From positions 62,001 to 126,000 of the IMG/VR virus record IMGVR_UViG_3300046003_007892: a stretch of DNA of 64,000 nt. One strand, given 5' to 3'. Positions 2,084 to 52,589 of this stretch are shown here, one piece after another (the stretch's first letter is position 1; every line of letters starts with the position of its first letter). The translations under genes and the position numbers were made by a program. A model generated the notes under the pieces. The model was not told the DNA's origin, did no database searches, and worked only from the letters and a program-made list of their open reading frames with translations.

Positions 2084-2175
2084 TGGTAGCAGACCAGGGA
2101 ATCGAGCCCTGCACGAACCGAGTATCTCTCGGCTGCTAAAGGTGTATAAATCCTTCGTGGTGCCTCACGCCTGCT
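2084..2175 (-). tRNA. atypical tRNA-like RNA, anticodon UAU (Ile), reduced D-arm, long variable arm
   Basis: acceptor AGCAGGC/GUCUGCU, A73, CCA; T-arm CAGGG-CUCGAUU-CCCUG; AC arm AAGG-A-UUUAUAC-A-CCUU; V-arm AGCCGAG/CUCGGUU. Confidence 0.6.
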
Positions 2176-2184
2176 AAATATTGG

Positions 2185-2715
2185 GTGTTTTATACTGTAT
2201 ACCGGATAACAAATCTGACGAACGGTAAGTTTTATGTGGGTGCTCACCAGACTGAGAACCTACGAGACTCATATATGGGAAGTGGTAGAGCCATCAAAGA
2301 AGCTATTCGTAAGCACGGTATAGATAGTTTCTCCAAAGAAATACTCCATGTGTTTGAAACTTCTGAAGAAATGTTCGCCATGGAGCGGTCCATTATTCAA
2401 GAGTGTCTGGGAGATCGAAACAACTACAATATGGGCGTCGGAGGAGCGGGAGGTTTCACATCTGAGATCGCTCGGCGAGGTGCACTAGCGCAAGCTGAGA
2501 AATACGACCTCGCCTCTAAGTCCGAATGGGGGCGAAAAGGAATTGCCGCGTTCCACGCAAACCCAGAGAATATCTCCAAACTTTCCGAGAATGGAAGGAA
2601 GGGTGGCCGGATGAACAAGGGAAAGAAAAAATCCCCCGAGCACATCCGCGCAATCCAGGAAGCCAAGCTTCGGAAAAAGAATGGTGCGCCCGGCCAGACT
2701 CGAACTGACAACTGA
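2185..2715 (+). CDS. GIY-YIG homing endonuclease (Seg-like)
   Basis: VYRITN..NGKFYVG, YMGSG, E and YN..GG motifs; TAAATA-N4-GTG; antisense inside tRNA operon. Confidence 0.9.
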   Translation: MFYTVYRITNLTNGKFYVGAHQTENLRDSYMGSGRAIKEAIRKHGIDSFSKEILHVFETSEEMFAMERSIIQECLGDRNNYNMGVGGAGGFTSEIARRGALAQAEKYDLASKSEWGRKGIAAFHANPENISKLSENGRKGGRMNKGKKKSPEHIRAIQEAKLRKKNGAPGQTRTDN

Positions 2716-2756
2716 TCACTTATGAGGTGATGGTTCTACCATTGAACTACAGGCGC
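2682..2756 (-). tRNA. tRNA CAU, probably Ile2 (lysidine)
   Basis: cloverleaf, loop CUCAUAA, CCA; G1-C72 (not initiator); C4-G69 and C5-G68 as in TilS substrates. Confidence 0.85.
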
Positions 2757-2757
2757 A

Positions 2758-2833
2758 TGGCATATCCGGCAGGGCTCGAACCTGCAACCGACGACTTAGA
2801 AGGTCGTTGCTCTTCCAATTGAGCTACGGATAC
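2758..2833 (-). tRNA. tRNA-Arg(UCU)
   Basis: canonical cloverleaf, loop CUUCUAA, CCA. Confidence 0.92.
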
Positions 2834-2885
2834 ACGGGAGGGTTCGGGGAGCGGCAGACGCGCGCGGACGAACTCCGGGAAGGAG

Positions 2886-2921
2886 TTATATTCGTCTCAG
2901 CCTGTTGGAGCGCGTCTTCAT
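2886..2921 (-). CDS. candidate leader peptide MKTRSNRLRRI of tRNA operon 1
   Basis: ATG 5 nt after TATAAATA; ends AGG CTG AGA CGA ATA TAA. Confidence 0.55.
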   Translation of the reverse strand: MKTRSNRLRRI

Positions 2922-2926
2922 AGGAG

Positions 2927-2957
2927 TATTTATACGTCAGGTCACCAGATAGGTCAA
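2927..2957 (-). promoter_or_regulatory. tRNA operon 1 promoter (sigma70-type plus late TATAAATA)
   Basis: TTGACC-N17-TATAAATA. Confidence 0.75.
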
Positions 2958-3409
2958 TAACCGCTTTTGATCATATCTTCCGAATCCGCATCAAGCTGGA
3001 TGAGGACGACGAACTTTTCGAAGGCGGCATGGTTGCCCACCAGTGTGATTTCGAGGGGACGGCTGGGACCGGCTACGTCAACGCCGAAGCAGAACTCTTC
3101 GTGCACGATCATGTATCGGTAGTTGCCGCCGCTGACGACCTCGTTGAACCGACGCGGCAGAGGCATGTAGTTTTTATGGTCGGGGTCGGTGATGATCTGT
3201 TGATCGATTCGATAGTAGGTATGGTCGGCTACATGCCCGACGTTAACTATCACTGAGCTTCGAATGCTTGGGCACTGCCCTGGCTCGAAAACCACGGGGG
3301 TTACCGCGTAGAACATCTTCGCCCACGCTCGACTGTCCAAGAGGGCGTTGTGCCAGCAATCCTCGTAGGCCTTGTCGATCAAGGCGATGAAGGGCATGGG
3401 GTCGATCAT
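2954..3409 (-). CDS. hypothetical protein
   Basis: 151 aa; C-terminus resembles next gene. Confidence 0.7.
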   Translation of the reverse strand: MIDPMPFIALIDKAYEDCWHNALLDSRAWAKMFYAVTPVVFEPGQCPSIRSSVIVNVGHVADHTYYRIDQQIITDPDHKNYMPLPRRFNEVVSGGNYRYMIVHEEFCFGVDVAGPSRPLEITLVGNHAAFEKFVVLIQLDADSEDMIKSGY

Positions 3410-5889: not shown

Positions 5890-6543
5890 CTAGTCAGTAT
5901 CGTCGTCGTTGTCAAAGGAACTGCTATTGTAGAAGTGCATGTCGAGTATGCGCGCGCCCCTGGTCGCGTCGATCATAATCTCGTCGTCGCTCGCGTAGCC
6001 ATCCCATTGATCATGAATGCTATGATGGAGGGCATCCTTGGCCGGAGAGTCCGGGATAGTCTTCATGAAGGCACTCAGGCCTTGCATGGACCACAGAACG
6101 GAATCGGCGGGGACCTCGACCTCATAGACGACCATCAGGGACTGGAGGCCCTCAATGGCGTCTCCGGGGAGATGGCGACGATGGACTTGATCGAGACTGA
6201 AGTTGTTTCGGTTGATGAAGCCATGGGCTTTTTTCAGCGAAGACGTGAACGCCTGCGGGCCCTTCTGTAGATCGAACCGGCAGTGGGTCGCCATTTCGGC
6301 CTTGAGACCACTGAACATGTCTCCGGCAACTTCGAACCGGTGAATGTCCTCTTCGGTGACGTCGTGATAGATGGCCCGGAAATATTTTCCACCGCCGAAC
6401 ACTTCCGTGTAGCCGTGGTCACGCAAGACCTGGGCGGCGTGACGCTGGTCGAACCACTGATTATGTTGGATGTAGCTAGCCAGCGCGCTCAGCGTCTCGT
6501 CGAGGACGTTCAGGCTTTCGGCGAGTGTGAGGAAGCGTCTCAT
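5890..6543 (-). CDS. late protein with capsid-targeting-like N-terminus, possibly ART-like
   Basis: TATAAATA-N5-ATG; MRRFLTLAES; AFTSSLKKAHGF. Confidence 0.7.
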   Translation of the reverse strand: MRRFLTLAESLNVLDETLSALASYIQHNQWFDQRHAAQVLRDHGYTEVFGGGKYFRAIYHDVTEEDIHRFEVAGDMFSGLKAEMATHCRFDLQKGPQAFTSSLKKAHGFINRNNFSLDQVHRRHLPGDAIEGLQSLMVVYEVEVPADSVLWSMQGLSAFMKTIPDSPAKDALHHSIHDQWDGYASDDEIMIDATRGARILDMHFYNSSSFDNDDDTD

Positions 6544-6558
6544 CCTCGTATTTATAGG

Positions 6559-7371: not shown

Positions 7372-7406
7372 AGAATAGACGACCGTGCACACTTGTCAAG
7401 TAAATA
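7372..7406 (-). promoter_or_regulatory. early promoter
   Basis: TATTTAC-TTGACA-N16-TATTCT. Confidence 0.75.
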
Positions 7407-8116: not shown

Positions 8117-8163
8117 AAGATAGACGAACTGTGTTCTTTGTCAAGTAAATATCTAGATAAATA
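8117..8163. promoter_or_regulatory. back-to-back early (minus) and late (plus) promoters
   Basis: minus TTGACA-N16-TATCTT; plus TAAATA at 8146 and 8158. Confidence 0.7.
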
Positions 8164-8167
8164 TCGG

Positions 8168-8965
8168 ATGGACGGGATACGAAAATTTCTTTGCATCGTC
8201 GAATCTGCTCAGGCCCAAGCTCAGGCCCAGCCCGAGTTCCGATGCAGTTGCTGCCAGCCTCTGACCGAGTGGGCCGAAACGCTTACCAATTTGGGTCAGA
8301 CGTTTAGCGTCGGCGGCACTCAAATATCAATCGTCGGTAACGGTACGATAACCATTAACGGTCAAACCTATGGCGGGACCTCGTCTCAAGTCGGTGCACA
8401 GGAGCCATACGTCGCCAAGCCAGAAGAACGACGCGATGTAGCCGAACCAGATAAACCAGAAGAACGGCGAGATGTCGGCAATACCGAACTCATCTACTAC
8501 GAACATGTAAGCCCCCAGGTCAGAGATCAACTTGAACTCGCCGTATCCTACGCTCGCCGATGGATGGCCGCCAAAAAACTCACGTGGATTATGGACACCC
8601 AAATCATAATCAAGACAGACCCAACTTGGGGCGGCTTCTACGACGCCGATAACGATTCTCTTCGGATAACCCCCGGCTACTCAGTCAATGATCTCGTTCC
8701 TCTGATCATCCATGAGTTCGGCCATCGTTTCCATAACCGAGGCTGTCCTCGCGGCGTCTTCACCGGCATCGACACCGAAATCGCAGACAAGTACGCATAC
8801 TGTATGTCGCACGATACCTCAGTGTTCGTCAGTAACTATTCCAGAACGAACAGGAATGAGTTCTGGGCCGAGCATTTTGCCGGATGGGTCATGGGCACCA
8901 TGCCCGGAAATCGTGTGGGACCATGGATTGGCGAAATGGTAGCCAAATACAATAGAACCAACTAG
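8168..8965 (+). CDS. zinc metallopeptidase (lethal-factor-like), late
   Basis: HEFGH and YSRTNRNEFWAE; TAAATA-N4-ATG; MDGIRKFLCIVES. Confidence 0.75.
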   Translation: MDGIRKFLCIVESAQAQAQAQPEFRCSCCQPLTEWAETLTNLGQTFSVGGTQISIVGNGTITINGQTYGGTSSQVGAQEPYVAKPEERRDVAEPDKPEERRDVGNTELIYYEHVSPQVRDQLELAVSYARRWMAAKKLTWIMDTQIIIKTDPTWGGFYDADNDSLRITPGYSVNDLVPLIIHEFGHRFHNRGCPRGVFTGIDTEIADKYAYCMSHDTSVFVSNYSRTNRNEFWAEHFAGWVMGTMPGNRVGPWIGEMVAKYNRTN

Positions 8966-11899: not shown

Positions 11900-11960
11900 A
11901 TCCTGCCATCTACATTAATTTGACGATCTCGTCTACCAAAATATTCGGTCTAAATACGGC

Positions 11961-12326
11961 ATGCGCACATATATCGACATCCTCATGGAATCCGCAGGCG
12001 AGCGGGAATACTTCATCCGCTTCGGGGACGTCCCTGAGTCGGGCTTCTCAACCATCCACAGCATGGGAAAATCCACGGGCAAGCAAGAAGTCGGTGTGTC
12101 GGCGTATTCAGCCTTCGAGGAGAACGGTCGCTGGTTCGTCGATGACGAAGAACTCAATCACACCTTCACCCTCGGCCACCTGATGAAAGAGGGTCGGGAT
12201 ATCTATCTGCTGACTGGCCGCCGCCTCCCCGAGAAGGGAAGCGACGGCGAGCCCCTGATAGCAGACGTAGAAATCGTCAAGAAACTACCGAAGGTATTTC
12301 AGGGGACGATGATCGACTTCCTCTAG
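11961..12326 (+). CDS. late protein with capsid-targeting-like N-terminus
   Basis: TAAATA-N4-ATG; MRTYIDILMES. Confidence 0.75.
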   Translation: MRTYIDILMESAGEREYFIRFGDVPESGFSTIHSMGKSTGKQEVGVSAYSAFEENGRWFVDDEELNHTFTLGHLMKEGRDIYLLTGRRLPEKGSDGEPLIADVEIVKKLPKVFQGTMIDFL

Positions 12327-19255: not shown

Positions 19256-19335
19256 CAGTTCCTCCGGTGTAGAGATCGAACTAAGCCCGATGCGAAATCT
19301 TGTCAAGCAAAAAGGGTTGACTGCGATAGCGATAA

Positions 19336-19617
19336 ATGGAAAATGATGAGATGAAAATCAGCCCCCGCACCTGCACCCACGTCTTCAGCGTCGCGAAGAA
19401 AACCCGGTTCTATGTTGACACGCTCGACCCCGTTTGGCCGGACGTTGAGAAGATGCTGAAGAAATGGCGCATCGGCAATGTGAACGGGCATTTCAACCTC
19501 GAACGCACTGCCGACATCATAGAGATGAACCTCGTGTTGGGAATCACCGGTAGCTATGAGCCCCTAGACGAGGAAGACCAGGAACTCGTCCGTGAAGCGT
19601 TCGCGCGTCTTACCTGA
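19336..19617 (+). CDS. hypothetical protein
   Basis: 93 aa. Confidence 0.55.
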   Translation: MENDEMKISPRTCTHVFSVAKKTRFYVDTLDPVWPDVEKMLKKWRIGNVNGHFNLERTADIIEMNLVLGITGSYEPLDEEDQELVREAFARLT

Positions 19618-20419: not shown

Positions 20420-20443
20420 GTAGCTCAACGATAAATAGGGAGT

Positions 20444-20977
20444 ATGAATATTGAACTACTCCAAGAATATATCGAGCAGGGTCTGTCCAGCTATCAGATC
20501 GCGGCCAAGACCAATAAGGCGGCGACGACCGTCCGATACTGGATAAAGAAGCACGGCCTCAGCATTTCAAAGCCTGATAAGCCGGATAACCATTGCGCCC
20601 GGTGCGACACCGTCAAGACCAGAGACGACTTCTACCAATACGACACCAAGCGGAGGACGACCTACTGTAAGCCCTGCATGGCGTCGTGGATGAAAGATCG
20701 CTGTCGGAAGCTCAAGGCCCTGGCGGTGGAATATGCGGGAGGCTGCTGCAAGGGCTGCGGCTACGACAAATATCAGGGTGCTCTAGACTTCCATCACCGG
20801 GACCCGGCGCAGAAGGATTTCTCCATTGCTGCCAACATGCGGCGCGGAGACCTCAGCGAGACCATGAAGGCCGAGATCGATAAGTGTGTTCTCCTTTGTG
20901 CTAACTGCCACCGCGAGGCTCACGGCGGACTACGGGATTGGAAGATGGAGGGCCCTGAGAGAATCGAACTCTCGTGA
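20444..20977 (+). CDS. HNH homing endonuclease with HTH and Zn-finger
   Basis: ALDFHHRDP, LLCANCHREAH; TAAATA-N6-ATG; antisense inside tRNA operon. Confidence 0.9.
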   Translation: MNIELLQEYIEQGLSSYQIAAKTNKAATTVRYWIKKHGLSISKPDKPDNHCARCDTVKTRDDFYQYDTKRRTTYCKPCMASWMKDRCRKLKALAVEYAGGCCKGCGYDKYQGALDFHHRDPAQKDFSIAANMRRGDLSETMKAEIDKCVLLCANCHREAHGGLRDWKMEGPERIELS

Positions 20978-21019
20978 AGTGATTAAAAGTCACCTATTCT
21001 GCCATTGAATTAAGGGCCC
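20946..21019 (-). tRNA. tRNA-Lys(UUU), canonical length
   Basis: loop CUUUUAA, U73, CCA. Confidence 0.9.
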
Positions 21020-21022
21020 ATC

Positions 21023-21436: not shown

Positions 21437-21466
21437 TATTTAGCCTGAGGGCTGCGTTTCTGTCAA
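21437..21466 (-). promoter_or_regulatory. tRNA operon 2 promoter
   Basis: TTGACA-N16-GCTAAATA. Confidence 0.75.
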
Positions 21467-21483
21467 TAAGTTTTTTCGACTGG

Positions 21484-21981
21484 TTAGACGATTGCGGTTC
21501 CGCCGTTCGTCAGTCTGATCTCAGACCCGGCGATGAGGCAGAGTTCGTCCTCCCGGTGGAAGTCCCAGAAGATGCCCCGCACCACGCTGCCCAGCCAGTC
21601 GATGGTGGAGTGGTCAATGTAAGCTTCCAAGATGGGACCGCCGTTGGCGAACTGCTCGGCCATGTCTGGGTTGACGGTCCAGTGCACGCCCAAGGGTTCT
21701 CGGGGTTTTTCAGTCTCGCGGAAGCCCCGATACATAATCTCCTGGCGGGCGTATGCAGCCACGTGGGCCTTGGCGTCACCGGTCATACTCACGAGCCACT
21801 GGTCTAGGGCATCTCGATTTCCGCCGAACATGTGCTCGATGCCGCCTTCGGTCCACCCGATCTGTTCTTTGTAACAGTCATGGACGTCGCCGTTCGCGGG
21901 GTCCCGCGAGTAGGCGATCACTTTCTCGGCGGTGACGTTAGCCAGTCCGGCCGTTTCCATGAGATCGATGTAGGCGCGCAT
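21484..21981 (-). CDS. late protein with capsid-targeting-like N-terminus, possibly ART-like
   Basis: TAAATA-N5-ATG; MRAYIDLMET; MYRGF..LGVHWT..A..FA. Confidence 0.7.
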   Translation of the reverse strand: MRAYIDLMETAGLANVTAEKVIAYSRDPANGDVHDCYKEQIGWTEGGIEHMFGGNRDALDQWLVSMTGDAKAHVAAYARQEIMYRGFRETEKPREPLGVHWTVNPDMAEQFANGGPILEAYIDHSTIDWLGSVVRGIFWDFHREDELCLIAGSEIRLTNGGTAIV

Positions 21982-21994
21982 GCACCTATTTAGA

Positions 21995-23370: not shown

Positions 23371-24195
23371 TCAAATCTCTTCTTCGCTCAGGTCGGCAGA
23401 GTCGGCGCGGAATTCTTTTGCGAAGATGGACTTGATGTTCTTGGGGTCGAACACGAGCCACCAGTGACTGCTCTCGTAATCCCGAGAGCCATGATCGGCC
23501 AGCGTGTCGGAGATGTAGATACCGTCATAACCCTCGGCCATGATGGCGGCTTTGAACTCGTCTACTTCCTGGTCGTTCGACTTCACGCCACGGGGCAGAT
23601 GGGCCAGCAGGCGATGCCAGCCGTCCGTGCGCTGATAGCTGGCTTCCAACGCTCTGACTTCCCTGCCCAGCAATTCGTAGCGGGCCCGGTCAAAGGGCTG
23701 CCCGTCAGATTTGGCCATGAAGGTCGAACCGCCGTCTTCAGTTTTGAGGCCACGTTCGTTTTCCCGACCGCTGGCGTTGTATCGTTTGTGGAGGGCGTAA
23801 TACTCACGCATCTTGTCGGCGTCATCGCCCCACAGTCCCTCGGAATCCATATAGAGGGGCTTGGTGACCCGGAGGAAGCAGGGCATCACGTTTCCTCCGC
23901 CACCCGCACCAGCGGGCAGAGAATCGGTTCGATCACTGGCGACGCCCGCGAAATAGCTGGGAGTTCTCGGGTCCACGTCGAACCAGAACCCGAGACGGTT
24001 GAAGCCGTAGGACTTTCGGTTCTCCGATGCGTGCTTGAACTCCGTCACGTCTTCGAAGGTGCCGTGATAGCAGACGACTGGATGGCCATCGCCGTCTACG
24101 ACCTTGCTGCCCTGAAACCACCGCTGGAATCCTGGATGCTGGAGAACCCGCTCAACGGGGTTGGCAGCTTCGACGAGGTCGATCAGATCACGCAT
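23371..24195 (-). CDS. ART-PolyVal-like ADP-ribosyltransferase, late
   Basis: WFQGSKVVD..P..YHGT, GFWF, GYDGIYI, VFDPKNIKS; TAAATA-N4-ATG; MRDLIDLVEA. Confidence 0.75.
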   Translation of the reverse strand: MRDLIDLVEAANPVERVLQHPGFQRWFQGSKVVDGDGHPVVCYHGTFEDVTEFKHASENRKSYGFNRLGFWFDVDPRTPSYFAGVASDRTDSLPAGAGGGGNVMPCFLRVTKPLYMDSEGLWGDDADKMREYYALHKRYNASGRENERGLKTEDGGSTFMAKSDGQPFDRARYELLGREVRALEASYQRTDGWHRLLAHLPRGVKSNDQEVDEFKAAIMAEGYDGIYISDTLADHGSRDYESSHWWLVFDPKNIKSIFAKEFRADSADLSEEEI

Positions 24196-24202
24196 GGCGT
24201 AT

Positions 24203-24706
24203 TTATTCGGAGCGGAAGACGATGTCGGACGCATTCACACGCAAGACCGGTGGCATCTTGACGATCACCTCATCTTGGGCTCGCATCTTCGTGAACGGTT
24301 GGGCCTCTTCGTCAAAACGGACGAGGTCGCAGAACTCGTCCAGACCTTCCTTCTTGATCACGACATAGGCGGAGTCGAAGCCGAACATGAAATCGGTTGC
24401 GCTGTCTTGTTCACTCGACCAACTAGCAAGCGGTCTCCCCGCCGAGATAATGTCGAAGAAACCATTTTGGCGCAGGCTTTCTTTCTGGGCCCGGTCGGGC
24501 ATGTAGCCTCGATAGAGGGCGGCATGACCAGAGGTGAAGTGGTTGGCAGTCGCTTCCAGAGCCAGGAGATCGTTCTGGACCTCGTCCATGTCACCGCAGA
24601 CCCAGGTCGAAAGCGCACGACATAGGAGCTTCACCTGCGGGTCAGGATGCTGGCAGGATTGCCAGTGCGGTTTGGCAGTCTCCATGAGGACGTCGATGTA
24701 TCGCAT
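24203..24706 (-). CDS. late protein with capsid-targeting-like N-terminus, possibly ART-like
   Basis: TAAATA-N4-ATG; MRYIDVLMET; LYRG..ASWS..A.DF..QDEV. Confidence 0.7.
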   Translation of the reverse strand: MRYIDVLMETAKPHWQSCQHPDPQVKLLCRALSTWVCGDMDEVQNDLLALEATANHFTSGHAALYRGYMPDRAQKESLRQNGFFDIISAGRPLASWSSEQDSATDFMFGFDSAYVVIKKEGLDEFCDLVRFDEEAQPFTKMRAQDEVIVKMPPVLRVNASDIVFRSE

Positions 24707-24710
24707 CCGA

Positions 24711-24724
24711 TATTTACCTAAATA
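24711..24724. promoter_or_regulatory. divergent late promoters
   Basis: TATTTA-CC-TAAATA with ATG 4 nt away on each side. Confidence 0.8.
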
Positions 24725-24728
24725 CGCC

Positions 24729-25898
24729 ATGCGCGATCTCATCAATCTCATCACCGAAAGCCAGCAGACCGTCACGCTGTATCGGGGAGATGCATCAGAG
24801 ATCGAACGCCTCACGATGGACAAGGCGGACTCGGAGGCCTTGTTCGGGCGAGGCATCTACCTCACCGACAGTCCCGAGGTTGCCGCCGACTACACCCTGA
24901 AGGGGAACGGCGGGGACATCGTTTTTCAATCGGGCGCGTACAACAGTTCGTTCCAATCCAAGGAACAGCTAATCCAGGCCTATCTGGAAAAAATCTGCAT
25001 GGAGCTTGGCTACGAAGAAGAGGCCAAGAGGCTCAAAGAGCAATGGCATCAGATTGCTCTGGAACGCCAAAACAAGGCGGTGATTCCAGATGGTCTCTAC
25101 TGGGATGGGATGTCCTCTGAGGAACAGAACAAAGCCCACGTCGTCTACCGGGAAATCAGAAACAAGCCCGCGCTAGAGGCCAGGGCCGAGTATGAAGTCG
25201 AACGTCGCGCCCTGTCCCAGAAATTCGTGGCCAAGGCCAAAAAGGTCTATCGGGAGCGCATCAAGGATATGCGGATTATCCGCCAGAGCACGGGCGCATG
25301 GGTGTTCGTCAAATCGGAGCGCGGGGGCACGATCTCAACGTTTGAGGTGCCGCGCGCCTACTGCGAGATGACCCTCGACACCGAGGCGCCATTGGCAGAC
25401 GATGTCTTGCCGATTCTTCGGGATGCTTTCTATGCGGCATATGACAAAATCCCATACGGGACTGGCCGGATGGACCTCCGGGTCTGGGACGCCAAAGGTG
25501 ATGAGAAATTCCCGCTGTCGTTCGACGATTACGTCGAGGGCTATAAGACGATGGGGTCCAGGTATGCTTGGGCCGACCACAACATTGGCGGCAAGGGGAA
25601 GAACCCCACAGTGGACGAACTCCTAAATGGAACCCACGCTGGCTACCACGTCTTGAAAAATGCGCAGGACAAACTCATCGCTGATCTGAAGGGCAAGGGC
25701 TACGTGGGCTTCCGCTACCAGGGCGGCGTTCGCGTGGGAGGAACCGGCAATCGAGGTGGTGGTGGCGTCCTACACAACGCCTATTCGTTCTGGGACGAGA
25801 AGGTCATCAACGGCTTCCGTGGCGATCACCACGCCTACGAGGACCCCAAGGTTGACCCGTCCTCGGCCAAGGGCATGCGCTCGACGAGCGTTCTCTAG
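24729..25898 (+). CDS. ART-PolyVal-like protein with helical insert, late
   Basis: LYRG..FGRGIYLTDSPEVAADY..GYVGF; MRDLINLITES. Confidence 0.7.
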   Translation: MRDLINLITESQQTVTLYRGDASEIERLTMDKADSEALFGRGIYLTDSPEVAADYTLKGNGGDIVFQSGAYNSSFQSKEQLIQAYLEKICMELGYEEEAKRLKEQWHQIALERQNKAVIPDGLYWDGMSSEEQNKAHVVYREIRNKPALEARAEYEVERRALSQKFVAKAKKVYRERIKDMRIIRQSTGAWVFVKSERGGTISTFEVPRAYCEMTLDTEAPLADDVLPILRDAFYAAYDKIPYGTGRMDLRVWDAKGDEKFPLSFDDYVEGYKTMGSRYAWADHNIGGKGKNPTVDELLNGTHAGYHVLKNAQDKLIADLKGKGYVGFRYQGGVRVGGTGNRGGGGVLHNAYSFWDEKVINGFRGDHHAYEDPKVDPSSAKGMRSTSVL

Positions 25899-28524: not shown

Positions 28525-28600
28525 TTCGACTCCAATTGTTGTCCGTGAACCTATTTATGCAAGTAAAATCCACCCATAAGTGAGTACCCATAAATAGCCA

Positions 28601-29014
28601 ATGCGATATAGTGAGATCAACGAAGGTCAGGTTAGGAAGGTGGAAGTTCACTTCCGGCAGCCCGAAGTTATCGTTTACATCAACCCATCTGCTGCTCAAA
28701 TCGATACTGCTCTGTCGCGGACACAGTATGCTTGCCTGCGAGCCCACCTGGGAGATAAACTATTGGTTTGGGATGCCGAGTTTGCCACGCACGATCACGT
28801 CGATGACTGCGGAGAGTTCGGCAAGCTCAAGTATATCCGCCTCCTGATCGAGGACCACAAAATCCGCTGCATGCGCTACGGCTATGACGGCGCCGATTTC
28901 CCCACGGACCCAAACACCCTGGAAGACCTCATCTCGCACGAGCAACTCGTCGAGGCCGTGCAGTCCCATCCGCTGATCATGCAGGCGTTCCCCGGCTACC
29001 CGGTCTGGGCCTAA
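28601..29014 (+). CDS. late protein with capsid-targeting-like N-terminus
   Basis: TAAATA-N4-ATG; MRYSEINEG. Confidence 0.75.
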   Translation: MRYSEINEGQVRKVEVHFRQPEVIVYINPSAAQIDTALSRTQYACLRAHLGDKLLVWDAEFATHDHVDDCGEFGKLKYIRLLIEDHKIRCMRYGYDGADFPTDPNTLEDLISHEQLVEAVQSHPLIMQAFPGYPVWA

Positions 29015-29021
29015 ATACAGC

Positions 29022-29777
29022 ATGCGCCTTCTTGCCCTCTGCGAATCCGAGCAAAGCGATAGAGATGATCGCTTGAGGGCCAAACTGGCTTTCAAGCAGA
29101 TCAAGTATTGGCTCGACGCCAACGCGGATGATGGCTTCCGGCGTTTGAAGAAACTCCCCGAGGGAACCCGCTACGCGGGCTCGTTCGCACTCTTGTCTGA
29201 AATGTGCGATCTTGATGCCGACTATCCAGATTTGGCATTCATCTTTATCGACCGGCTCGATATCACTGGCGGGAGAGTCACGGCCAGCTTTGGGCAGTCT
29301 GCGGACAAGTCCAAATCTTTCATCTTCATTGGATGCCTGAAGGGACCTGGGGATTCCACGTATCTGAACACGCGTTTCTCCGGGACGGAGAAATATTTCG
29401 TCCACGAGTTCATGCACTACCTGATGCGCAAACGGGCACCGGATACGAAGCCGTCAACGTCCAAGCTGAATGGCAACGATTGGACGGACTACCACAACGA
29501 CGCTGACGAGACGAACGCCTACTATCAGGAGGCCGCTCACGGTGCTGTGGATTTCTTCCGCGTGGTTGCCTCGCACGCGCCAGTGCGCGTCGATGAGTTT
29601 GCCGACATGACGGTTCAGGAACTCGTCGCCTTCATCGTTCCACGGTTCGTCAACCAGGATTTCCTCGGCGACCTCACGGCGGACAATCGCAGGGCTCTCT
29701 TCAAGAGACTGGCTCGATGCGTGAACGAGACCATCAAGCCCATGCTAGAGCGCGCACGAGTAGCAGCCGTCGTCTAG
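29022..29777 (+). CDS. late HExxH metallopeptidase-like protein with capsid-targeting-like N-terminus
   Basis: TAAATA-N4-ATG; MRLLALCES; FVHEFMHY..DETNAYYQE. Confidence 0.7.
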   Translation: MRLLALCESEQSDRDDRLRAKLAFKQIKYWLDANADDGFRRLKKLPEGTRYAGSFALLSEMCDLDADYPDLAFIFIDRLDITGGRVTASFGQSADKSKSFIFIGCLKGPGDSTYLNTRFSGTEKYFVHEFMHYLMRKRAPDTKPSTSKLNGNDWTDYHNDADETNAYYQEAAHGAVDFFRVVASHAPVRVDEFADMTVQELVAFIVPRFVNQDFLGDLTADNRRALFKRLARCVNETIKPMLERARVAAVV

Positions 29778-31784: not shown

Positions 31785-31850
31785 GAGACACTCCTCTGGG
31801 GCGCCAATCGCCCCAAGGTATTTACCTTACAGGAATGGTCTACCAGATGT

Positions 31851-33731: not shown

Positions 33732-33797
33732 GGCCTGCCCTCTATGTGATCAGAACCCCTATCCCGTTGATCTATTCTTGTCAACTAAATAAGTACG

Positions 33798-34364
33798 ATG
33801 AGAACTCTCCGAACCTGCCTTGAATACGAGGCCACATGCAAACCTGAGATCGCCGACCTGATGGCACGGGCTGAATACCTCACCGATCATGAACTCCAGA
33901 CCGTCCAGGTTCCGCTACCGTGGTTTCGTGATGCCCTGCGGGAACTCCGCGACGAACTGAAGGGCCAGACGATCATGAAGATCACCGGGGCGGTCCTGAA
34001 TGACTACGTCACGATCTCGACCAACCCCGACCCCGAAGGCGTCACCTATCAATGGATGGGGATGGACACCTACGTCAAGGTCGGCAACACGCAACTGCTC
34101 CTCAAATATGGGGAGTATTTCTGGTTCGACCCCGAGGGCGGCGTCTGGCTCGACACCATCTACTGTCGGGTGCCCGACCCGATCTTGCGCGCCAGCCAGC
34201 CCGGTCGAATCGCGGTCATGACCCGCAGCCGCTATCAAGAAACCCTGCGGGCGGCCAGGAACAAGAACTGCCCCGCAAACGCACAGGTGATGGAGATCAG
34301 CGACGGTCGTCCCTCTGCTCTCGGTGGAGTCCTTGGACAGTTCGGCGTCCGTATCCAGCGATAA
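33798..34364 (+). CDS. late protein with capsid-targeting-like N-terminus
   Basis: TAAATA-N6-ATG; MRTLRTCLE. Confidence 0.7.
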   Translation: MRTLRTCLEYEATCKPEIADLMARAEYLTDHELQTVQVPLPWFRDALRELRDELKGQTIMKITGAVLNDYVTISTNPDPEGVTYQWMGMDTYVKVGNTQLLLKYGEYFWFDPEGGVWLDTIYCRVPDPILRASQPGRIAVMTRSRYQETLRAARNKNCPANAQVMEISDGRPSALGGVLGQFGVRIQR

Positions 34365-34371
34365 ATACGCC

Positions 34372-34974
34372 ATGCGCTGGATAGAGATCAACGAGGCCCG
34401 AGAGGCACCCCTCTACCATTTCATGGACGTCAAGAAGGCCATCGACGTCTTGTTGCACGACGCCATGCCCGCGAACTGGACCCACTACATCAATGATCAG
34501 CCGGTCAAGGGGAACAGTTTCACACGAAATCCCAGGTTTGAGATCGGCGGTCGCCCTGTCCGATTGATCATGAACCAGCACGCCCTGGCGGCGCGGCACA
34601 AGATCATCCCTCTCGACGGTGAGATCACCTTCCGGCATCCCAAGAACGACGAGGTCGGCTATGTCTCTGCCGACCCTTGGCCGCCCAAGAAACTGCACGG
34701 TTTCAAAGACCGCGTCATCAACTCCCGAAAACCTGGAGAAGATCGGGCCCTTCAGGAGGAGTTCGTCGTCGGCGACATCGCGCCTCTGGCCCGGATGATT
34801 GTCGAGATCGAGATTCTGAAGCCCAACTTCTATCACATGTCCGGCCAGCAGGCTTCCGACCTTCTCGACCTCGTTCGCAACTACGGTACAGAGCACAACG
34901 TCGCGACTAAAATCCATCCCGATTTCATTGAGCAAGTCAACGACATCAGGGAAATGTGGAGAGAAGAGGACTAG
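34372..34974 (+). CDS. late protein with capsid-targeting-like N-terminus, possibly ART-like
   Basis: TAAATA-N4-ATG; MRWIEINEA; LYHF..NSFTRN..QEE. Confidence 0.7.
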   Translation: MRWIEINEAREAPLYHFMDVKKAIDVLLHDAMPANWTHYINDQPVKGNSFTRNPRFEIGGRPVRLIMNQHALAARHKIIPLDGEITFRHPKNDEVGYVSADPWPPKKLHGFKDRVINSRKPGEDRALQEEFVVGDIAPLARMIVEIEILKPNFYHMSGQQASDLLDLVRNYGTEHNVATKIHPDFIEQVNDIREMWREED

Positions 34975-37950: not shown

Positions 37951-38008
37951 CAAATACTCCAGAGACCAAAATACGAGTTTACTCGATGGTCTGCAATATT
38001 TAGTCCGC

Positions 38009-42737: not shown

Positions 42738-42756
42738 TCGCGGTCATAAATAGGTC

Positions 42757-43299
42757 ATGGCCGATCTCGATCTCGAACAGATTCACGACTCTCCGCACCT
42801 CTTGGACATCCTTCTCCAGATGGAAGACGTCCTCGACAGCATGGACCTTTATGTTTTCCGCAACTGGCTGAAGGGCGAAGTTGCCGAAGGACCGAATGTC
42901 CGTCGCTACTGGCTCGATTTTACCCTTCGATATGCCCACAAGGATATGCCTGACCCCCGTGGTGCCTTGCGGTTGCTCAAGCACGGTATCCGGGTCGATT
43001 ACCAAAAGGGACGCCAGGAAAACACCGAGAGTGACGAAGAGTTCGAGGGCGACGAGCCCCGCGAAGAAGACCTGATGTGGCTGGTAAAAATCAGCATCCC
43101 GCGTCGTCTGGTGGTCCAGATGGATGCGGCCGAGCACGATTTCTACGACGACGAGATCGACATCGATCAGGTCGAAGACGCCAAGGACGACGGCATGGAC
43201 GACGAGTCCGGCTTCGATGGCGAGGAGCAAACCGAAGAAGGCGGGGCGCCGCCGCCTCCTGGACCGGATGGCGAACCCGCAGAGGAGCCCGCACGATGA
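42757..43299 (+). CDS. late acidic hypothetical protein
   Basis: TAAATA-N4-ATG; MPDPRGALRL. Confidence 0.75.
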   Translation: MADLDLEQIHDSPHLLDILLQMEDVLDSMDLYVFRNWLKGEVAEGPNVRRYWLDFTLRYAHKDMPDPRGALRLLKHGIRVDYQKGRQENTESDEEFEGDEPREEDLMWLVKISIPRRLVVQMDAAEHDFYDDEIDIDQVEDAKDDGMDDESGFDGEEQTEEGGAPPPPGPDGEPAEEPAR

Positions 43300-44827: not shown

Positions 44828-44907
44828 CCTGTTAACTCCTCGCACTACTTTCGCGCGTGGGGATAAATACGCCTGTCTATATCCATGCTGGATATCTTGG
44901 GTCTTCG

Positions 44908-49875: not shown

Positions 49876-49914
49876 GGGTGGAGATTACCAGATCGGGTCG
49901 GTGAGAAACAAAAT

Positions 49915-50223
49915 CTATCTGCACACCGTCATGTCGTCTGAGTACCGAATGACGGCGTGCTTGACCTCCAGGATGGCGTCGGCGGTGGAGAGATTGAACC
50001 ACTCGCCGGAAACCTTGAGATGACGAACCAATCCGTGCAGGGCTTTCTCCAAAGCCTTAACCTTCTCGGCCGGAACAGGCTCCTTGTGGAACAGGCGCAA
50101 CTTGGTGGCCGCGCCAGTCTGGAGTTGACGAACGCGTTTCTCCGGGGTGGCGGAAAAACCGAGCTTACACGGACCCTGGTCGGTCTCAGAGATCACATAT
50201 AGGTAGACGGTCTTTTCTTCCAT
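49915..50223 (-). CDS. GIY-YIG T5orf172-family protein
   Basis: LYVI..CKLGFS..KRVRQLQTG..E..LH..GEWF; TAAATA-N4-ATG. Confidence 0.8.
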   Translation of the reverse strand: MEEKTVYLYVISETDQGPCKLGFSATPEKRVRQLQTGAATKLRLFHKEPVPAEKVKALEKALHGLVRHLKVSGEWFNLSTADAILEVKHAVIRYSDDMTVCR

Positions 50224-50241
50224 CTCCTATTTAGTCTAGAG

Positions 50242-50643
50242 TTAATAGACCGGATGGCCGAGCAGTTGCTTGATCTGGCTGTAGAGACGGACGGCTCGAT
50301 AGAAGGCGTTGCGTTCTATGAGGCTGAAGCCCAGCACGCCGAGAGCTTCACGGAAGATTCGATCTGCTTTCTTGGGCGGCATGCCATGCGAGAGCATGAA
50401 GTCGTGCACGATGGCAGCCTTGGCTCCGCGACCAGTATCGATGAAGGCCCGCAGCGGCGCCGGGATGGACATGAAATCCGTTCGGAAGCCTACCGGAATT
50501 GAGATGATCTCGGTTGGGTTTTCAAAATCACCAACGCGGTATTCAAAGCCAGCCCAGAGGACGAATACGGTGCGGTTATGCACCATATCGTTGGTTACAC
50601 GCACGATCAAGTCTTCGGTGAAAGATGACATATGGTCCCCCAT
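50242..50643 (-). CDS. DUF1353-family protein
   Basis: IPVGFRTDFMSIP..AAIVHD..ADRIF. Confidence 0.8.
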   Translation of the reverse strand: MGDHMSSFTEDLIVRVTNDMVHNRTVFVLWAGFEYRVGDFENPTEIISIPVGFRTDFMSIPAPLRAFIDTGRGAKAAIVHDFMLSHGMPPKKADRIFREALGVLGFSLIERNAFYRAVRLYSQIKQLLGHPVY

Positions 50644-50665
50644 AAGATACTGGGAGTATTTATCG

Positions 50666-51040
50666 TCAGCTAGAAATTTTGATTTCTACTTCTTTCGGAA
50701 AGTTGATCTCGTCTTCGTCGAAAGCCAGTCTGATTTTCGCAGCTTGTTTGTCTGAGAACGTTGCCACCGAGCCGTCAGCGTTGTAGCCGAAGTTGATCGG
50801 GAAGCACTGAATAGCCCGCAAGCGGGCTTTGACCTCTTTGAACTCAGAAGCGTTGAAAACGCCGGGGAACTCAACGATGGTGATGCCAGGACGAACGCGA
50901 GGGGAGAACTCATTCCACCCCGTCAGAACCTGGAAGGAACTCCGTGTGCGACGACGAACAGGCGCGTTCGACCGAGCGATCACGCGCTCGTGCATGCGCC
51001 GGTCAAAGCTGGCCTGCTTGCTGCTCCACGTCGATTTCAT
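50666..51040 (-). CDS. hypothetical protein
   Basis: MKSTWSS, ATGA coupling. Confidence 0.6.
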   Translation of the reverse strand: MKSTWSSKQASFDRRMHERVIARSNAPVRRRTRSSFQVLTGWNEFSPRVRPGITIVEFPGVFNASEFKEVKARLRAIQCFPINFGYNADGSVATFSDKQAAKIRLAFDEDEINFPKEVEIKISS

Positions 51041-52233
51041 TCCGTGACCTCGTTCCAACCCCAGCGGACGCCGCCCCAAAGGTGGCGCACGAGATCAACG
51101 CGAGTAGCCGAACCCAGATGCTTGGCCACGACCCGGTGTCCAACCTCGACCGGGTCTTGCCCGTCGAAGATCGAGAACATCATCGTCCTGTCGAGTCCGT
51201 CCACGTCCTTGATCGCCAGCGCGAGGTCCCGCTTGGAATATCCGGCATACTGCTCGGCGACGCGTTTGGCCAGAGCCTCCATGTAGGTCGAGATGCCTTT
51301 CTGGACCGCGTCCGCGTAATCGACCACGCGCTGACGGTCGTCTGCCGCCAGCAGGGGCAGGGTGTCGTCGATCTTGTCCTCAAGGATGAGGGCCAAGACG
51401 TTCTTCTCGCTTGAGAGGTTGTCCTTGGCGGCATGCATGATGCAATATTCGTCGGCCTTGACCTTCAGCTTGTGGCCGTTCTGGAACGCGATCACCCAGC
51501 CCTCGGTCTCGACGAGGTCGCGGGTTTCGGTGACGAAATCGTTTACGTCGTGCAGGCTCCCAGGACGTCGCTGGACAAGCTCAACGCGGTGGAAGTCGCA
51601 CAGGTCGCCAAGATACCCGAAGTCGCTGTAGACCCCCGTATCGTTGTCGCGGATGGCCAGCAAGACCAGACGGTCTACCGGGTGGTCGATGACGATGCGC
51701 TGTTGGCGCGAACACCATTCGAAGATCGGGGTTTTGTTTTCGCTCACGCATTCTCGCGCAAGCCCCTCGTAGCGGAGATTGCGTTCAACGAACCGATCAA
51801 CCTGGAGGGCAATATCGGTGAGACCCATTTTGGTCGCCCACCGCATTCCACCAGACGTCGGCAATGGAGTGATCATGCTACCGTCCATCTTTTCTAGGAT
51901 GTCACAGTTTTCGCTCCAGTCAACATTTTGTGTAAGGACTTCCGGGCGTTCGTTGAGGTTGAAGAACTTGTGGAACTTCCGGTTCACTACTTTGCCAGTC
52001 GCCTTTGAGAAAGTCAGGCCACGGCACTCGCGCAGAATCGCATACTCGCGATCTTCCTCGCGGTCGCCAGAGAACGCCGGGAAAGTTCCAGAGAAACTGA
52101 TCAGGTAGTTGAAGAGGACAAAGTCGCCACGGTCGGCTTCAATGAAGACCTGGGTGCCCAGCCGGGCGTTGTGGCGCGCAACTACTCCGCTGACCTCAGC
52201 CAGGGACATGTCATGGGGAAATTCGTAAAACAT
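51037..52233 (-). CDS. T4 Rnl1-type RNA ligase
   Basis: ECRGL, HKFFN, EKMDGS, EGWV, KVK. Confidence 0.9.
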   Translation of the reverse strand: MFYEFPHDMSLAEVSGVVARHNARLGTQVFIEADRGDFVLFNYLISFSGTFPAFSGDREEDREYAILRECRGLTFSKATGKVVNRKFHKFFNLNERPEVLTQNVDWSENCDILEKMDGSMITPLPTSGGMRWATKMGLTDIALQVDRFVERNLRYEGLARECVSENKTPIFEWCSRQQRIVIDHPVDRLVLLAIRDNDTGVYSDFGYLGDLCDFHRVELVQRRPGSLHDVNDFVTETRDLVETEGWVIAFQNGHKLKVKADEYCIMHAAKDNLSSEKNVLALILEDKIDDTLPLLAADDRQRVVDYADAVQKGISTYMEALAKRVAEQYAGYSKRDLALAIKDVDGLDRTMMFSIFDGQDPVEVGHRVVAKHLGSATRVDLVRHLWGGVRWGWNEVTE

Positions 52234-52277
52234 TATACGTCTCAGATGATTGAGACGTATTTAGTCCTCAGATAACC

Positions 52278-52574
52278 CTAGTTGGGCAGAAGGGTGTCTG
52301 CGTGACGGTTGAAGAAATCGTATTCCTCGGTGAGTTGGAATATCAGGGCGTCACCTGGGTCATCGAACCGCATTGAGATGACGCGATCTTCGAGGTTCTC
52401 CACCTCCCACCCGTGGCGGCAGTTTCGGCCGCACCAGTTCTGGAGCAAGGCTTGGAAGAGGAGGGCGGTTACGATGTCGATTTTGGAGCGACGGATATCC
52501 AGCCCGAACTCGTAGCCGGGGCCCGACTCTCTTGCAGGGATGCCCGCCGTAGACGGGAAGCACGCCATGTCCAT
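52278..52574 (-). CDS. late hypothetical protein
   Basis: TAAATA-N4-ATG; ends MRFDDPGDALIFQLT. Confidence 0.65.
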   Translation of the reverse strand: MDMACFPSTAGIPARESGPGYEFGLDIRRSKIDIVTALLFQALLQNWCGRNCRHGWEVENLEDRVISMRFDDPGDALIFQLTEEYDFFNRHADTLLPN

Positions 52575-52589
52575 GCGGTATTTAGGCGC

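What the first reader, a model, noticed from the sequence alone, without database searches (positions are those of the whole stretch)
2175..52584. At least 16 genes start 4-6 nt after TAAATA: a leaderless late programme
Seen at starts 2185, 6543, 8168, 11961, 20444, 21981, 24195, 24706, 24729, 28601, 29022, 33798, 34372, 42757, 50223 and 52574, mostly with no room for an SD. TAAATACGCCATGCG recurs at three sites. Established: TATAAATA is the T4 late -10 element, and transcription starts a few nt downstream, so at or near the AUG. Inference: late translation relies on leaderless initiation, which may be why the phage carries IF3 and bS21.
Basis: partly seen in the sequence, partly recalled or inferred. 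Interest (0 to 1): 0.62.

Follow-up and report, generated by a model that had tools for sequence, protein, structure and literature searches.

The report
Late promoter fused to capsid-targeting start
In this giant T4-related phage the short late-promoter box TAAATA sits 4-6 bases before the start codon of dozens of genes, so their mRNAs probably have no leader. Most of these genes open with a T4-like capsid-targeting peptide, which marks them as proteins packed into the head and injected.

Summary
TAAATA occurs 32 times in the window against about 4 expected. TAAATA-N4-ATG occurs 11 times against 0.06 expected, and 34 times in the 240-kb record against 0 for the reversed control. All 16 listed starts exist; 14 agree with independent gene calls.

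TAAATA behaves as a promoter -10-like box, not a ribosome signal. It lies 17-18 nt after TTGAC in front of two tRNA clusters. It also lies 24-46 nt upstream of genes that have a GGAG ribosome-binding site, and directly after a terminator hairpin.

A complete 608-kb relative (about 60% identity, syntenic) encodes a gp55-family late sigma, a gp21 prohead protease and a gp23 capsid protein.

Most of these genes begin M-[RK]-x-[YFL]-I-[DE]-L-x-E, like the T4 capsid-targeting sequence MKTYQEFIAE with its (L/I)-x-E cleavage site. Their bodies are unrelated and include ADP-ribosyltransferases.

The best reading is a compact module of late promoter, leaderless AUG and packaging tag. It is not a general late programme, because other TAAATA promoters and the relative's capsid gene keep leaders with ribosome-binding sites.

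The proposed link to IF3 and bS21 is not supported. No transcript data were available.

The parts
6541..6556 (-). TATAAATA-N5-ATG. Start 6543 of a 217-aa protein beginning MRRFLTLAE (CTS-like).
8158..8170 (+). TAAATA-N4-ATG at 8168. Doubtful start: the caller uses 8564. A second TAAATA lies 12 nt upstream.
11951..11963 (+). TAAATA-N4-ATG. 121-aa protein beginning MRTYIDILME (CTS-like).
20432..20446 (+). TAAATA-N6-ATG. HNH homing endonuclease 20444-20977.
21979..21992 (-). TAAATA-N5-ATG. 165-aa protein beginning MRAYIDLME (CTS-like).
24193..24205 (-). TAAATA-N4-ATG. ART-PolyVal ADP-ribosyltransferase 23371-24195 beginning MRDLIDLVE. The TAA of the box is the stop codon of the upstream gene.
24704..24731 (.). 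Two back-to-back TAAATA-N4-ATG boxes of divergent genes (24706 on the - strand, 24729 on the + strand). Only 22 nt separate the two ATGs.
28591..28603 (+). TAAATA-N4-ATG. 137-aa protein beginning MRYSEINE.
29012..29024 (+). TAAATA-N4-ATG. 251-aa protein beginning MRLLALCE. The TAA of the box is the stop codon of 28601-29014.
33786..33800 (+). TAAATA-N6-ATG. 188-aa protein beginning MRTLRTCLE. The box is also the flank of an early-type promoter on the - strand.
34362..34374 (+). TAAATA-N4-ATG. 200-aa protein beginning MRWIEINE. The TAA of the box is the stop codon of 33798-34364.
42747..42759 (+). TAAATA-N4-ATG. 180-aa virion structural protein (phrog_12928, 1.9e-35).
50221..50233 (-). TAAATA-N4-ATG. 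T5orf172/MUG113 nuclease-like gene, 102 aa.
52572..52628 (-). A 15-bp-stem hairpin with a T tract (52596-52628), then 5 nt, TAAATA, N4 and the ATG at 52574 of a 98-aa gene.
2175..2187 (+). TAAATA-N4-GTG. GIY-YIG (SegE-like) homing endonuclease 2185-2715.
2922..2962 (-). TTGACC-N17-TATAAATA promoter in front of tRNA-Arg and tRNA-Met (2682-2833). The ATG 5 nt downstream opens only 11 codons.
21437..21470 (-). TTGACA-N18-TAAATA promoter in front of four tRNA-Lys genes (20946-21311).
28552..28557 (-). TAAATA with a 27-nt leader and GGAG before the gene starting at 28524.
31819..31824 (-). TAAATA with a 34-nt hairpin leader and GGAG before the release-factor-like gene (start 31784).
37997..38002 (-). 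TAAATA with a 46-nt leader and GGAG before the gene starting at 37950.
44864..44869 (+). TAAATA with a 38-nt leader before the PAS-domain gene (start 44908).
52258..52263 (-). TAAATA with a 24-nt hairpin leader before the T4-type RNA ligase gene (start 52233).
61917..61922 (-). TAAATA with a 26-nt leader before the gene with a GTG start at 61890.
63352..63579 (-). bS21 gene, with its own TTGACA-N17-TATAAT promoter, GGAG site and GTG start.
63654..64000 (-). 3' part of the IF3 gene (it runs on to 64190, outside the window). It lies in the ClpX operon behind a hairpin, a TAAATA box and a 30-nt leader.

Best explanation
The window comes from a fragment (about 45% complete) of a giant T4-related phage.

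TAAATA, usually preceded by C or A, is the -10-like core of its late promoters. It is read by host RNA polymerase carrying a gp55-family sigma, with no -35 element.

In about half of its copies the box sits 4 nt (sometimes 5-6 nt) before an ATG, so the mRNA should begin at or within 1-2 nt of the AUG. It would then be translated without a Shine-Dalgarno site.

Most genes built this way open with M-[RK]-x-[YFL]-I-[DE]-L-x-E. This is the counterpart of the T4 capsid-targeting sequence MKTYQEFIAE. In T4 that peptide loads internal proteins onto the prohead core and is cut off after (L/I)-x-E by the gp21 protease.

The unit is therefore a roughly 40-nt module of late promoter, leaderless start and packaging tag. 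It is placed in front of many unrelated cargo genes (ADP-ribosyltransferases and unknowns) that would be packed in the head and injected. The same promoter-start fusion, without the tag, also drives homing endonucleases and at least one virion protein.

Shown: the motif statistics, its contexts, the shared N-terminal peptide, and the T4-type genes in the relative. Inferred: the transcription start site, leaderless translation, late timing, and packaging with cleavage.
For: Statistics.

Promoter rather than ribosome signal.
- TAAATA sits at the -10 position of TTGAC-N17/18 promoters before tRNA clusters.
- It lies 24-46 nt upstream of genes with GGAG sites.
- A strong terminator-like hairpin (z = -4.2) ends 6-10 nt before the box of gene 52574, leaving no room for another promoter.
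- Divergent genes 24706/24729 are 22 nt apart and share nothing conserved except two back-to-back boxes.
- The ortholog of gene 42757 in the 608-kb relative keeps TAAATA after a terminator, but with a 24-nt leader.
- A third relative has 6 TAAATA copies against 1.1 expected, all in 5' intergenic regions.

Sigma factor.
- The relative G001 is 59-60% identical and syntenic.
- It encodes a 276-aa protein that matches late-sigma families phrog_12791 (9e-79) and phrog_234 (4.5e-19). Its only PDB match is T4 gp55.
- The box variants match published gp55 promoters (PMC1524935).

Capsid-targeting sequence.
- Ten proteins with 19% mean identity share only M1, R2 and E10.
- Arg2 is encoded by both CGN and AGA, so the conservation is at protein level.
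- The T4 internal proteins IPII and IPIII read MKTYQEFIAE.
- The record has proteins starting MKTYADIL (an ART-PolyVal protein) and MKTYFEIV.
- G001 has a gp21 protease (1.3e-27) next to gp23, whose propeptide carries L-N-E|A.
- G001 sites give N-termini such as MRHFINLVETA.
- The roles of the CTS and of cleavage at I/L-x-E come from PMC3012670 and PMC5694885.

Late timing. Gene 42757 is a virion structural protein.

Lineage-specific. T4 has 0 sites against 7 for the control, and PA5oct has 5 against 18.
Against: - No transcript 5' ends are available; no RNA run was listed.
- T4 geometry (TATAAATA at -13..-6) puts +1 on the T of ATG for N4 spacing, so the start site must be 1 nt closer than in T4.
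- The base before the ATG is G more often than a pyrimidine, which is not the usual -1/+1 preference.
- The 240-kb record itself shows no gp55, sigma-70 region 2, gp21 or clear gp23. These are inferred from a relative.
- A gp45 clamp C-domain was found in neither genome, and gp33 was not sought.
- Three boxes overlap the stop codon of the upstream gene, which would also fit stop-start coupling.
- The host is unknown, so its ability to translate leaderless mRNA is unknown.
- Packaging and cleavage of the tagged proteins are untested.
Confidence: 0.6

Rival explanations
1. TAAATA-N4-ATG acts in the RNA, not the DNA. It would be an A/U-rich, unstructured element just before the AUG in a GC-rich message. 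It would allow Shine-Dalgarno-independent internal initiation, or reinitiation after the TAA stop, on polycistronic transcripts, possibly helped by the phage's bS21 or IF3.
For: Three boxes use their TAA as the stop codon of the upstream gene in tandem arrays (29012, 34362, 24205-). The spacing to the ATG is very tight, with N4 at 34 sites, N5 at 10 and N6 at 3. The phage encodes IF3 and bS21.
Against: The same hexamer precedes tRNA genes and 24-46-nt leaders that have GGAG sites. It follows a terminator directly at 52574. It stands back to back in 22-nt divergent intergenic regions, where each gene needs a promoter of its own. The G001 ortholog keeps the box 24 nt from the ATG.
Confidence: 0.17
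2. TAAATA is simply a -10 box for the host's primary sigma factor. The genes would be transcribed by unmodified host polymerase at any time, so there is neither a late class nor a phage sigma involved.
For: It works together with TTGAC -35 boxes before the tRNA clusters. No gp55 gene lies in the 240-kb record. PA5oct, the nearest isolate, is reported to use TTGAC/TATAATA promoters (PMC7318152).
Against: The start-abutting boxes have no -35 element and no TGn extension. The phage's own sigma-70-type promoters form a separate, strongly conserved family, TATTTACTTGACAAG. The relative has a gp55-family sigma. C/A-TAAATA matches published gp55 boxes. The cargo includes a virion protein and capsid-tagged proteins.
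Confidence: 0.12
3. The recurrence reflects history, not function. One gene's 5' end (box, ATG, first codons) would have been copied by duplication or recombination, so the fixed spacing carries no meaning.
For: TAAATACGCCATGCG occurs three times. Many of the genes lie in tandem or divergent arrays and share their first 10 codons.
Against: The N4 bases differ among sites. The protein bodies are unrelated (19% identity). Genes without the tag have the same spacing: HNH, GIY-YIG, T5orf172 and a virion protein. The arrangement persists in a relative at about 60% protein identity (27 sites against 2 for the control). TAAATA is absent from the interior of called genes in the window.
Confidence: 0.08

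Closest known systems
T4 late transcription (gp55 sigma, TATAAATA box; variants CTAAATA in Aeh1 and A/TATAAATA in RB49, KVP40 and S-PM2)
   Same: A short AT-rich -10-like box with no -35 element. The base before TAAATA is C or A. A gp55-family sigma is present in a syntenic relative. The box precedes virion genes and homing endonucleases.
   Different: The T at -13 and A at -12 are not conserved. In T4 the box lies well upstream of a leader with a ribosome-binding site, and T4 has no TAAATA-N4-ATG at all. Here half the boxes abut the ATG, which needs a start site 1 nt closer than in T4. gp33 and gp45 partners were not found.
T4 internal proteins IPI, IPII, IPIII and Alt with their capsid-targeting sequence, cleaved by gp21
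   Same: An N-terminal peptide of about 10 residues resembling MKTYQEFIAE and ending in (L/I)-x-E. It sits on otherwise unrelated proteins, including ADP-ribosyltransferases (compare Alt). A gp21 protease and a gp23 capsid protein with an L-x-E propeptide site are present in the relative.
   Different: There are dozens of tagged genes (at least 30 by my reading in 240 kb) against four in T4. The second residue is mostly R, not K. The T4 ip genes have normal leaders with ribosome-binding sites. Packaging here is untested.
Leaderless transcripts of Thermus phages phiYS40 and Lalka27a, and -10 boxes adjacent to ORFs in Deinococcus-Thermus and Actinobacteria
   Same: A -10-type box a few nt before the start codon, with the mRNA 5' end at the A or G of the initiator codon. 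In the Thermus phages most phage transcripts are of this kind (bioRxiv 10.64898/2026.04.20.719267; PMC12340547).
   Different: Those hosts use leaderless mRNAs widely themselves. Here the phage's other genes use GGAG sites, the host is unknown, and the box is of the gp55 type.
Pseudomonas jumbo phage PA5oct and Rak2-like phages (nearest isolates by the sigma factor, 45% identity)
   Same: A distant T4-type late sigma, dependence on host RNA polymerase, and large genomes.
   Different: PA5oct shows no excess of TAAATA-N4-ATG (5 against 18 for the control). No leaderless genes are reported for it.

Membership tests
gp55-type (T4-like) late promoter system | AT-rich -10-like box related to TATAAATA, with no conserved -35 | tested here: met
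   C/A-TAAATA, with no -35 and no TGn at the start-abutting sites. It matches CTAAATA and TATAAATA (PMC1524935). Only 2 full TATAAATA boxes are present.
gp55-type (T4-like) late promoter system | Phage-encoded gp55-family sigma factor | tested here: inconclusive
   Absent from the 240-kb record, which is about 45% complete. Present in the syntenic 608-kb relative: phrog_12791 9e-79, phrog_234 4.5e-19, and its only PDB match is T4 gp55. I could not find this phage's own copy on other contigs.
gp55-type (T4-like) late promoter system | Co-activator gp33 and sliding clamp gp45 | tested here: inconclusive
   The gp45 C-domain (PF09116) was found in neither genome. gp33 was not searched.
gp55-type (T4-like) late promoter system | Transcription start about 6 nt after the box; late timing | not testable with these tools
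   No RNA run was listed.
T4-type capsid-targeted internal proteins | Conserved N-terminal targeting peptide on otherwise unrelated proteins | tested here: met
   Alignment A1 has only M1, R2 and E10 invariant and 19% mean identity. Compare T4 MKTYQEFIAE.
T4-type capsid-targeted internal proteins | Prohead protease site (L/I)-x-E at the end of the tag | tested here: met
   L/I/C-x-E at residues 8-10 in the ten aligned proteins. The motif is described in PMC5694885.
T4-type capsid-targeted internal proteins | gp21-family prohead protease and T4-type head genes in the genome | tested here: inconclusive
   Present in the relative: PF03420 1.3e-27 and PF07068 2.5e-93. Not present in this fragment.
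T4-type capsid-targeted internal proteins | Presence in virions with a processed N-terminus | not testable with these tools
   Needs virion mass spectrometry.
Leaderless mRNA | 5' end of the primary transcript at or within a few nt of the start codon | not testable with these tools
   Only geometry is available: 4-6 nt between box and ATG, and a terminator directly upstream at 52574.
Leaderless mRNA | AUG strongly preferred as start codon; no Shine-Dalgarno site | tested here: met
   At N4 spacing the record has 34 ATG, 2 GTG and 0 TTG. There is no room for a ribosome-binding site. Other genes of the phage use GGAG 5-9 nt before the ATG.

The most novel reading that the evidence does not exclude
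A lineage of 0.5-0.6-Mb T4-related phages has evolved a portable module of about 40 nt: a gp55-type promoter, a leaderless AUG and a capsid-targeting peptide. Any gene placed behind it is expressed late, translated without a Shine-Dalgarno site, and loaded into the head for injection. This would give the phage an arsenal of dozens of injected effectors. Leaderless initiation would also insulate them from controls that act on Shine-Dalgarno sites.
Probability: 0.4. Interest if true: 0.78.

Novelty: new variant of a known kind. Interest (0 to 1): 0.62.

Why it matters
The parts are known: gp55 promoters, the T4 capsid-targeting sequence, and leaderless phage mRNAs. Their fusion is not. T4 has no such site, and no paper in the searched library links TATAAATA with leaderless transcripts.

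If confirmed, this would be the first T4-type phage lineage with systematic leaderless late genes. It would show that gp55-type holoenzymes can start 5 nt after the box.

It would also give a simple sequence rule (box-N4-ATG plus M-R-x-x-I-D-L-x-E) for predicting the injected proteins of uncultured megaphages. Those proteins are likely anti-defence and host-takeover factors. Finally, it corrects the appealing but unsupported idea that phage IF3 and bS21 serve leaderless translation.

Tried and rejected
- The Python box was lost. My own gene finder and motif logos could not be run, so contexts were read and from stored gene calls.
- No RNA sequencing run was listed.
- Megablast of the window against isolated phages found nothing.
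- The search for related loci found no relatives for three of the four proteins tried: two of the three window proteins and the G001 sigma, which found only itself.
- gp55, sigma-70 region 2, gp21 and sheath searches were negative in the 240-kb fragment. The gp45 C-domain was negative in both genomes.
- Contigs carrying the two sigma homologs I looked up came from other samples. The window phage's own sigma therefore remains unseen.
- No ortholog of the doubtful 8168 gene was found in G001.
- One literature search (CTAAATA with 'late', matched anywhere) returned only primers. The phiYS40 paper is not held.
- Rejected: TAAATA as an RNA-processing site. There is no evidence for it, and the tRNA-promoter and terminator contexts speak for transcription initiation.
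- Rejected: an extended -10 (TGn) reading, because no TGn is conserved.
- No structure or complex prediction was needed.

Full report
**Source.** The window is bases 62,001-126,000 of a 240,363-bp IMG/VR virus record (JGI 3300046003 Ga0485178_000005). The record has 58% G+C and CheckV rates it about 45% complete. It carries gyrase/topoisomerase genes, ClpX/ClpP/ClpS, two aminoacyl-tRNA synthetases, a T4-type RNA ligase, tRNAs, IF3 and bS21. The Python box was lost, so everything after that rests on the other tools and on reading the outputs.

**Observation.**
- TAAATA occurs 32 times in the window against 4.2 +/- 2.1 expected.
- It is the most over-represented hexamer of the record: 90 copies, obs/exp 2.72.
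- TAAATA-N4-ATG occurs 11 times against 0.06 expected, and the N5 form 3 times against 0.05.
- The whole record has 34 N4 sites against none for the reversed control.
- By my count there are also 10 N5 and 3 N6 sites, so about half of all boxes abut an ATG.
Stored gene calls, made independently, put 14 of them exactly there.
- Start 2185 is not called. Its product is a SegE-like GIY-YIG homing endonuclease whose domain begins at residues 1-5, so that start is credible.
- Start 8168 is doubtful: the caller uses 8564, and no ortholog was found.
- TAAATACGCCATG recurs three times. The full T4 octamer occurs only twice.

**The boxes are not one class.** By my reading, the 32 copies divide as follows.
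- 16 abut a start codon.
- 2 are the -10 element of complete TTGAC-N17/18 promoters, about 90-120 nt before tRNA clusters (2932-, 21442-).
- 10 lie upstream of leaders. Seven clear cases have 24-46-nt leaders, most with GGAG: 28557-, 31824-, 38002-, 44527+, 44864+, 52263- and 61922-.
- 4 are only the reverse strand of an early-type promoter family, TATTTACTTGACAAG. That family has 10 copies against 0.43 expected and drives leftward genes with normal leaders.
- None lies inside a called gene, apart from the three that overlap a stop codon.

**Promoter or ribosome signal?** Five observations favour a promoter.
- A translation signal has no business in front of tRNA genes.
- The same hexamer precedes leaders that carry ordinary ribosome-binding sites. 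Such sites (GGAG 5-9 nt before the ATG) are common among the phage's other genes.
- At gene 52574 a 15-bp-stem hairpin with a T tract (z = -4.2) ends a few bases before the box. Only 15 nt lie between the terminator and the ATG.
- Divergent genes 24706 and 24729 are 22 nt apart, and the two boxes stand back to back between them.
- In a relative the ortholog of gene 42757 keeps TAAATA right after a terminator, but with a 24-nt leader.

**Which polymerase?** The relative, IMGVR_UViG_3300046665_000548, is 607,744 bp and rated complete.
- It shares a 59%-identical ortholog of gene 42757 and a 60%-identical ortholog of the 466-aa protein, at matching distance from each other.
- It has 27 TAAATA-N4-ATG sites against 2 for the control.
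- It encodes a 276-aa protein matching the late-sigma families phrog_12791 (9e-79) and phrog_234, which is the family of T4 gp55 (4.5e-19). The only PDB match of this protein is T4 gp55.
- It also has a gp23-type capsid protein (2.5e-93) and a gp21-type prohead protease (1.3e-27) side by side.
- In a third relative the sigma gene lies beside genes with gp46/gp47-like domains (SMC/AAA and metallophosphatase), close to where gene 55 lies relative to gene 47 in T4. There TAAATA (6 copies against 1.1 expected) is confined to 5' intergenic regions.
- The base before TAAATA at the start-abutting sites is C (about half), A (about a third), G, and never T. Published gp55 boxes include CTAAATA in Aeh1 and TATAAATA in T4 (PMC1524935).
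- The window's own record shows no gp55, sigma region 2, gp21 or clear gp23. This fits a half genome, but it means the sigma is inferred.
- This sigma family has more than 7,800 members, many on contigs of 200-600 kb. The nearest isolates are the PA5oct group at 45% identity.

The shared ATGCG... is not part of the promoter.
- Ten of the proteins, aligned, have unrelated bodies (19% mean identity). They share only M1, R2 and E10, within M-[RK]-x-[YFL]-I-[DE]-L-x-E.
- Arg2 is encoded by both CGN and AGA, so the conservation is at the protein level.
- T4 internal proteins IPII and IPIII begin MKTYQEFIAE, and IPI begins MKTFKEF. Elsewhere in this record proteins begin MKTYADIL and MKTYFEIV.
- In T4 this peptide is the capsid-targeting sequence. 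It binds otherwise diverse internal proteins to the prohead core. The gp21 protease then removes the propeptides, cutting after Glu in I/L-x-E, for example ITE-6 and LTE-619 in Alt (PMC3012670; PMC5694885).
- All ten aligned proteins have L/I/C-x-E at residues 8-10. The relative's capsid propeptide has L-N-E|A at the expected place. The relative's box-abutting genes give N-termini such as MRHFINLVETA and MKMRGLIDLIEN.
- Three tagged proteins in the record hit the ART-PolyVal ADP-ribosyltransferase family, one of them only weakly. This recalls T4 Alt, a packaged ADP-ribosyltransferase.
- Proteins that must enter proheads have to be made late, which agrees with a gp55-type promoter. Gene 42757, also behind a box, is a virion structural protein (phrog_12928, 1.9e-35).
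- The untagged genes with the same geometry are homing endonucleases (HNH, GIY-YIG, T5orf172) and small unknowns.

**Is the mRNA leaderless?** This is an inference.
- For it: there is no room for a ribosome-binding site. The N4 bases are G+C-rich and variable. ATG is used at 34 N4 sites against GTG at 2 and TTG at none. The peptide conservation starts exactly at that ATG. The terminator and divergent-pair geometry leave no other place for a promoter.
- Difficulty: T4's box spans -13 to -6, with bases at -12, -9 and -8 flipped into gp55 pockets (PMC7892883). That places +1 on the sixth base after the box, which for N4 is the T of ATG. The start must therefore be one base closer than in T4, or 1-2 bases closer still, giving a 1-2-nt leader. 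The N5 and N6 sites fit T4 geometry directly.
- Precedent: leaderless phage transcripts next to -10 boxes are known for Thermus phages and for Deinococcus-Thermus hosts.
- Contrast: T4 has no TAAATA-N4-ATG (0 against 7 for the control) and PA5oct shows no excess (5 against 18). T4's own ip genes have leaders with ribosome-binding sites.
- Literature: no paper in the searched library joins TATAAATA with leaderless transcripts.

**Scope.** The arrangement is not the whole late programme. The relative's major capsid gene starts behind AGGAG, with no box found in the 1.3 kb upstream that I hold. Many boxes in the window drive ordinary leaders.

**IF3 and bS21.** Both genes are real. bS21 has its own consensus TTGACA-N17-TATAAT promoter, a GGAG site and a GTG start. 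IF3 starts with GTG inside the ClpX operon, behind a hairpin, a TAAATA box and a 30-nt leader with AGGA. In E. coli the IF2:IF3 ratio decides leaderless initiation, with more IF2 favouring it. bS21 is linked to Shine-Dalgarno initiation and is missing from leaderless-rich mycobacteria (PMC6101614). From my own knowledge, not checked here: IF3 was reported to antagonise leaderless starts (Tedin et al. 1999), and phiYS40 infection was reported to shift the host IF2/IF3 balance.

**Verdict.** It needs recasting as a module of late promoter, leaderless start and capsid-targeting tag, placed on many cargo genes of a giant T4-related phage. This is a new variant of known kinds. Confidence is about 0.85 that TAAATA is a gp55-type promoter core, about 0.75 that the N-terminal peptide is a capsid-targeting or cleavage tag, and about 0.6 for truly leaderless transcripts.

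Noticed in passing
window 31104-31784 (-): The release-factor-like gene (PCRF and RF-1 domains, lacking RF domain 1) is a single reading frame broken by one in-frame TGA at 31683-31685. Gene callers split it into 33 aa and 183 aa. It lies behind TAAATA, a hairpin leader and GGAG. Readthrough, self-regulation or recoding are all possible, and none was tested.
   Followed up: partly
window 2083-2833: A GIY-YIG (SegE-like) homing endonuclease (2185-2715, +) lies antisense between tRNA-Arg/tRNA-Met (2682-2833, -) and a tRNA-like 3' piece of about 57 nt ending in CCA (about 2083-2140, -). Neither ARAGORN nor Rfam calls that piece. T4 also has a GIY-YIG gene (segB) inside its tRNA cluster.
   Followed up: partly
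window 20444-21311: Four tRNA-Lys genes lie in a row on the - strand, and two of them are unusually long (94 and 87 nt). An HNH homing endonuclease (20444-20977, +) overlaps the last tRNA antisense by about 30 nt.
   Followed up: no
window 2065-2079, 7392-7406, 8137-8151, 22426-22440, 32186-32200, 33777-33791 (-) and others: An early-type promoter family, TATTTACTTGACAAG, followed about 17 nt later by a TAtnnT box. It has 10 copies against 0.43 expected. Its upstream flank read backwards accounts for several TAAATA hits.
   Followed up: partly
window 63352-63650 (-); L002 7397-7470: bS21 has a textbook TTGACA-N17-TATAAT promoter of its own, so it is probably made by unmodified host polymerase from early on. 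IF3 begins with GTG and has no visible ribosome-binding site.
   Followed up: partly
window 41931-42737 (+): A 268-aa protein with a weak match (E 0.005) to the N-terminal, propeptide-containing part of the T4 capsid protein gp23. It lies just upstream of the virion protein gene 42757.
   Followed up: no
G000:C1:18906-18933 and 19291-19653: Outside the window, a divergent pair of TAAATA-N5-ATG boxes. One of the genes starts MKTYADIL, almost the T4 capsid-targeting sequence, and carries an ART-PolyVal domain.
   Followed up: partly
L006, L037 (relatives): The 276-aa gp55-family sigma has more than 7,800 relatives at E <= 1e-10, many on contigs of 200-600 kb. This indicates a very large, mostly uncultured clade of T4-related jumbo and mega phages.
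   Followed up: partly
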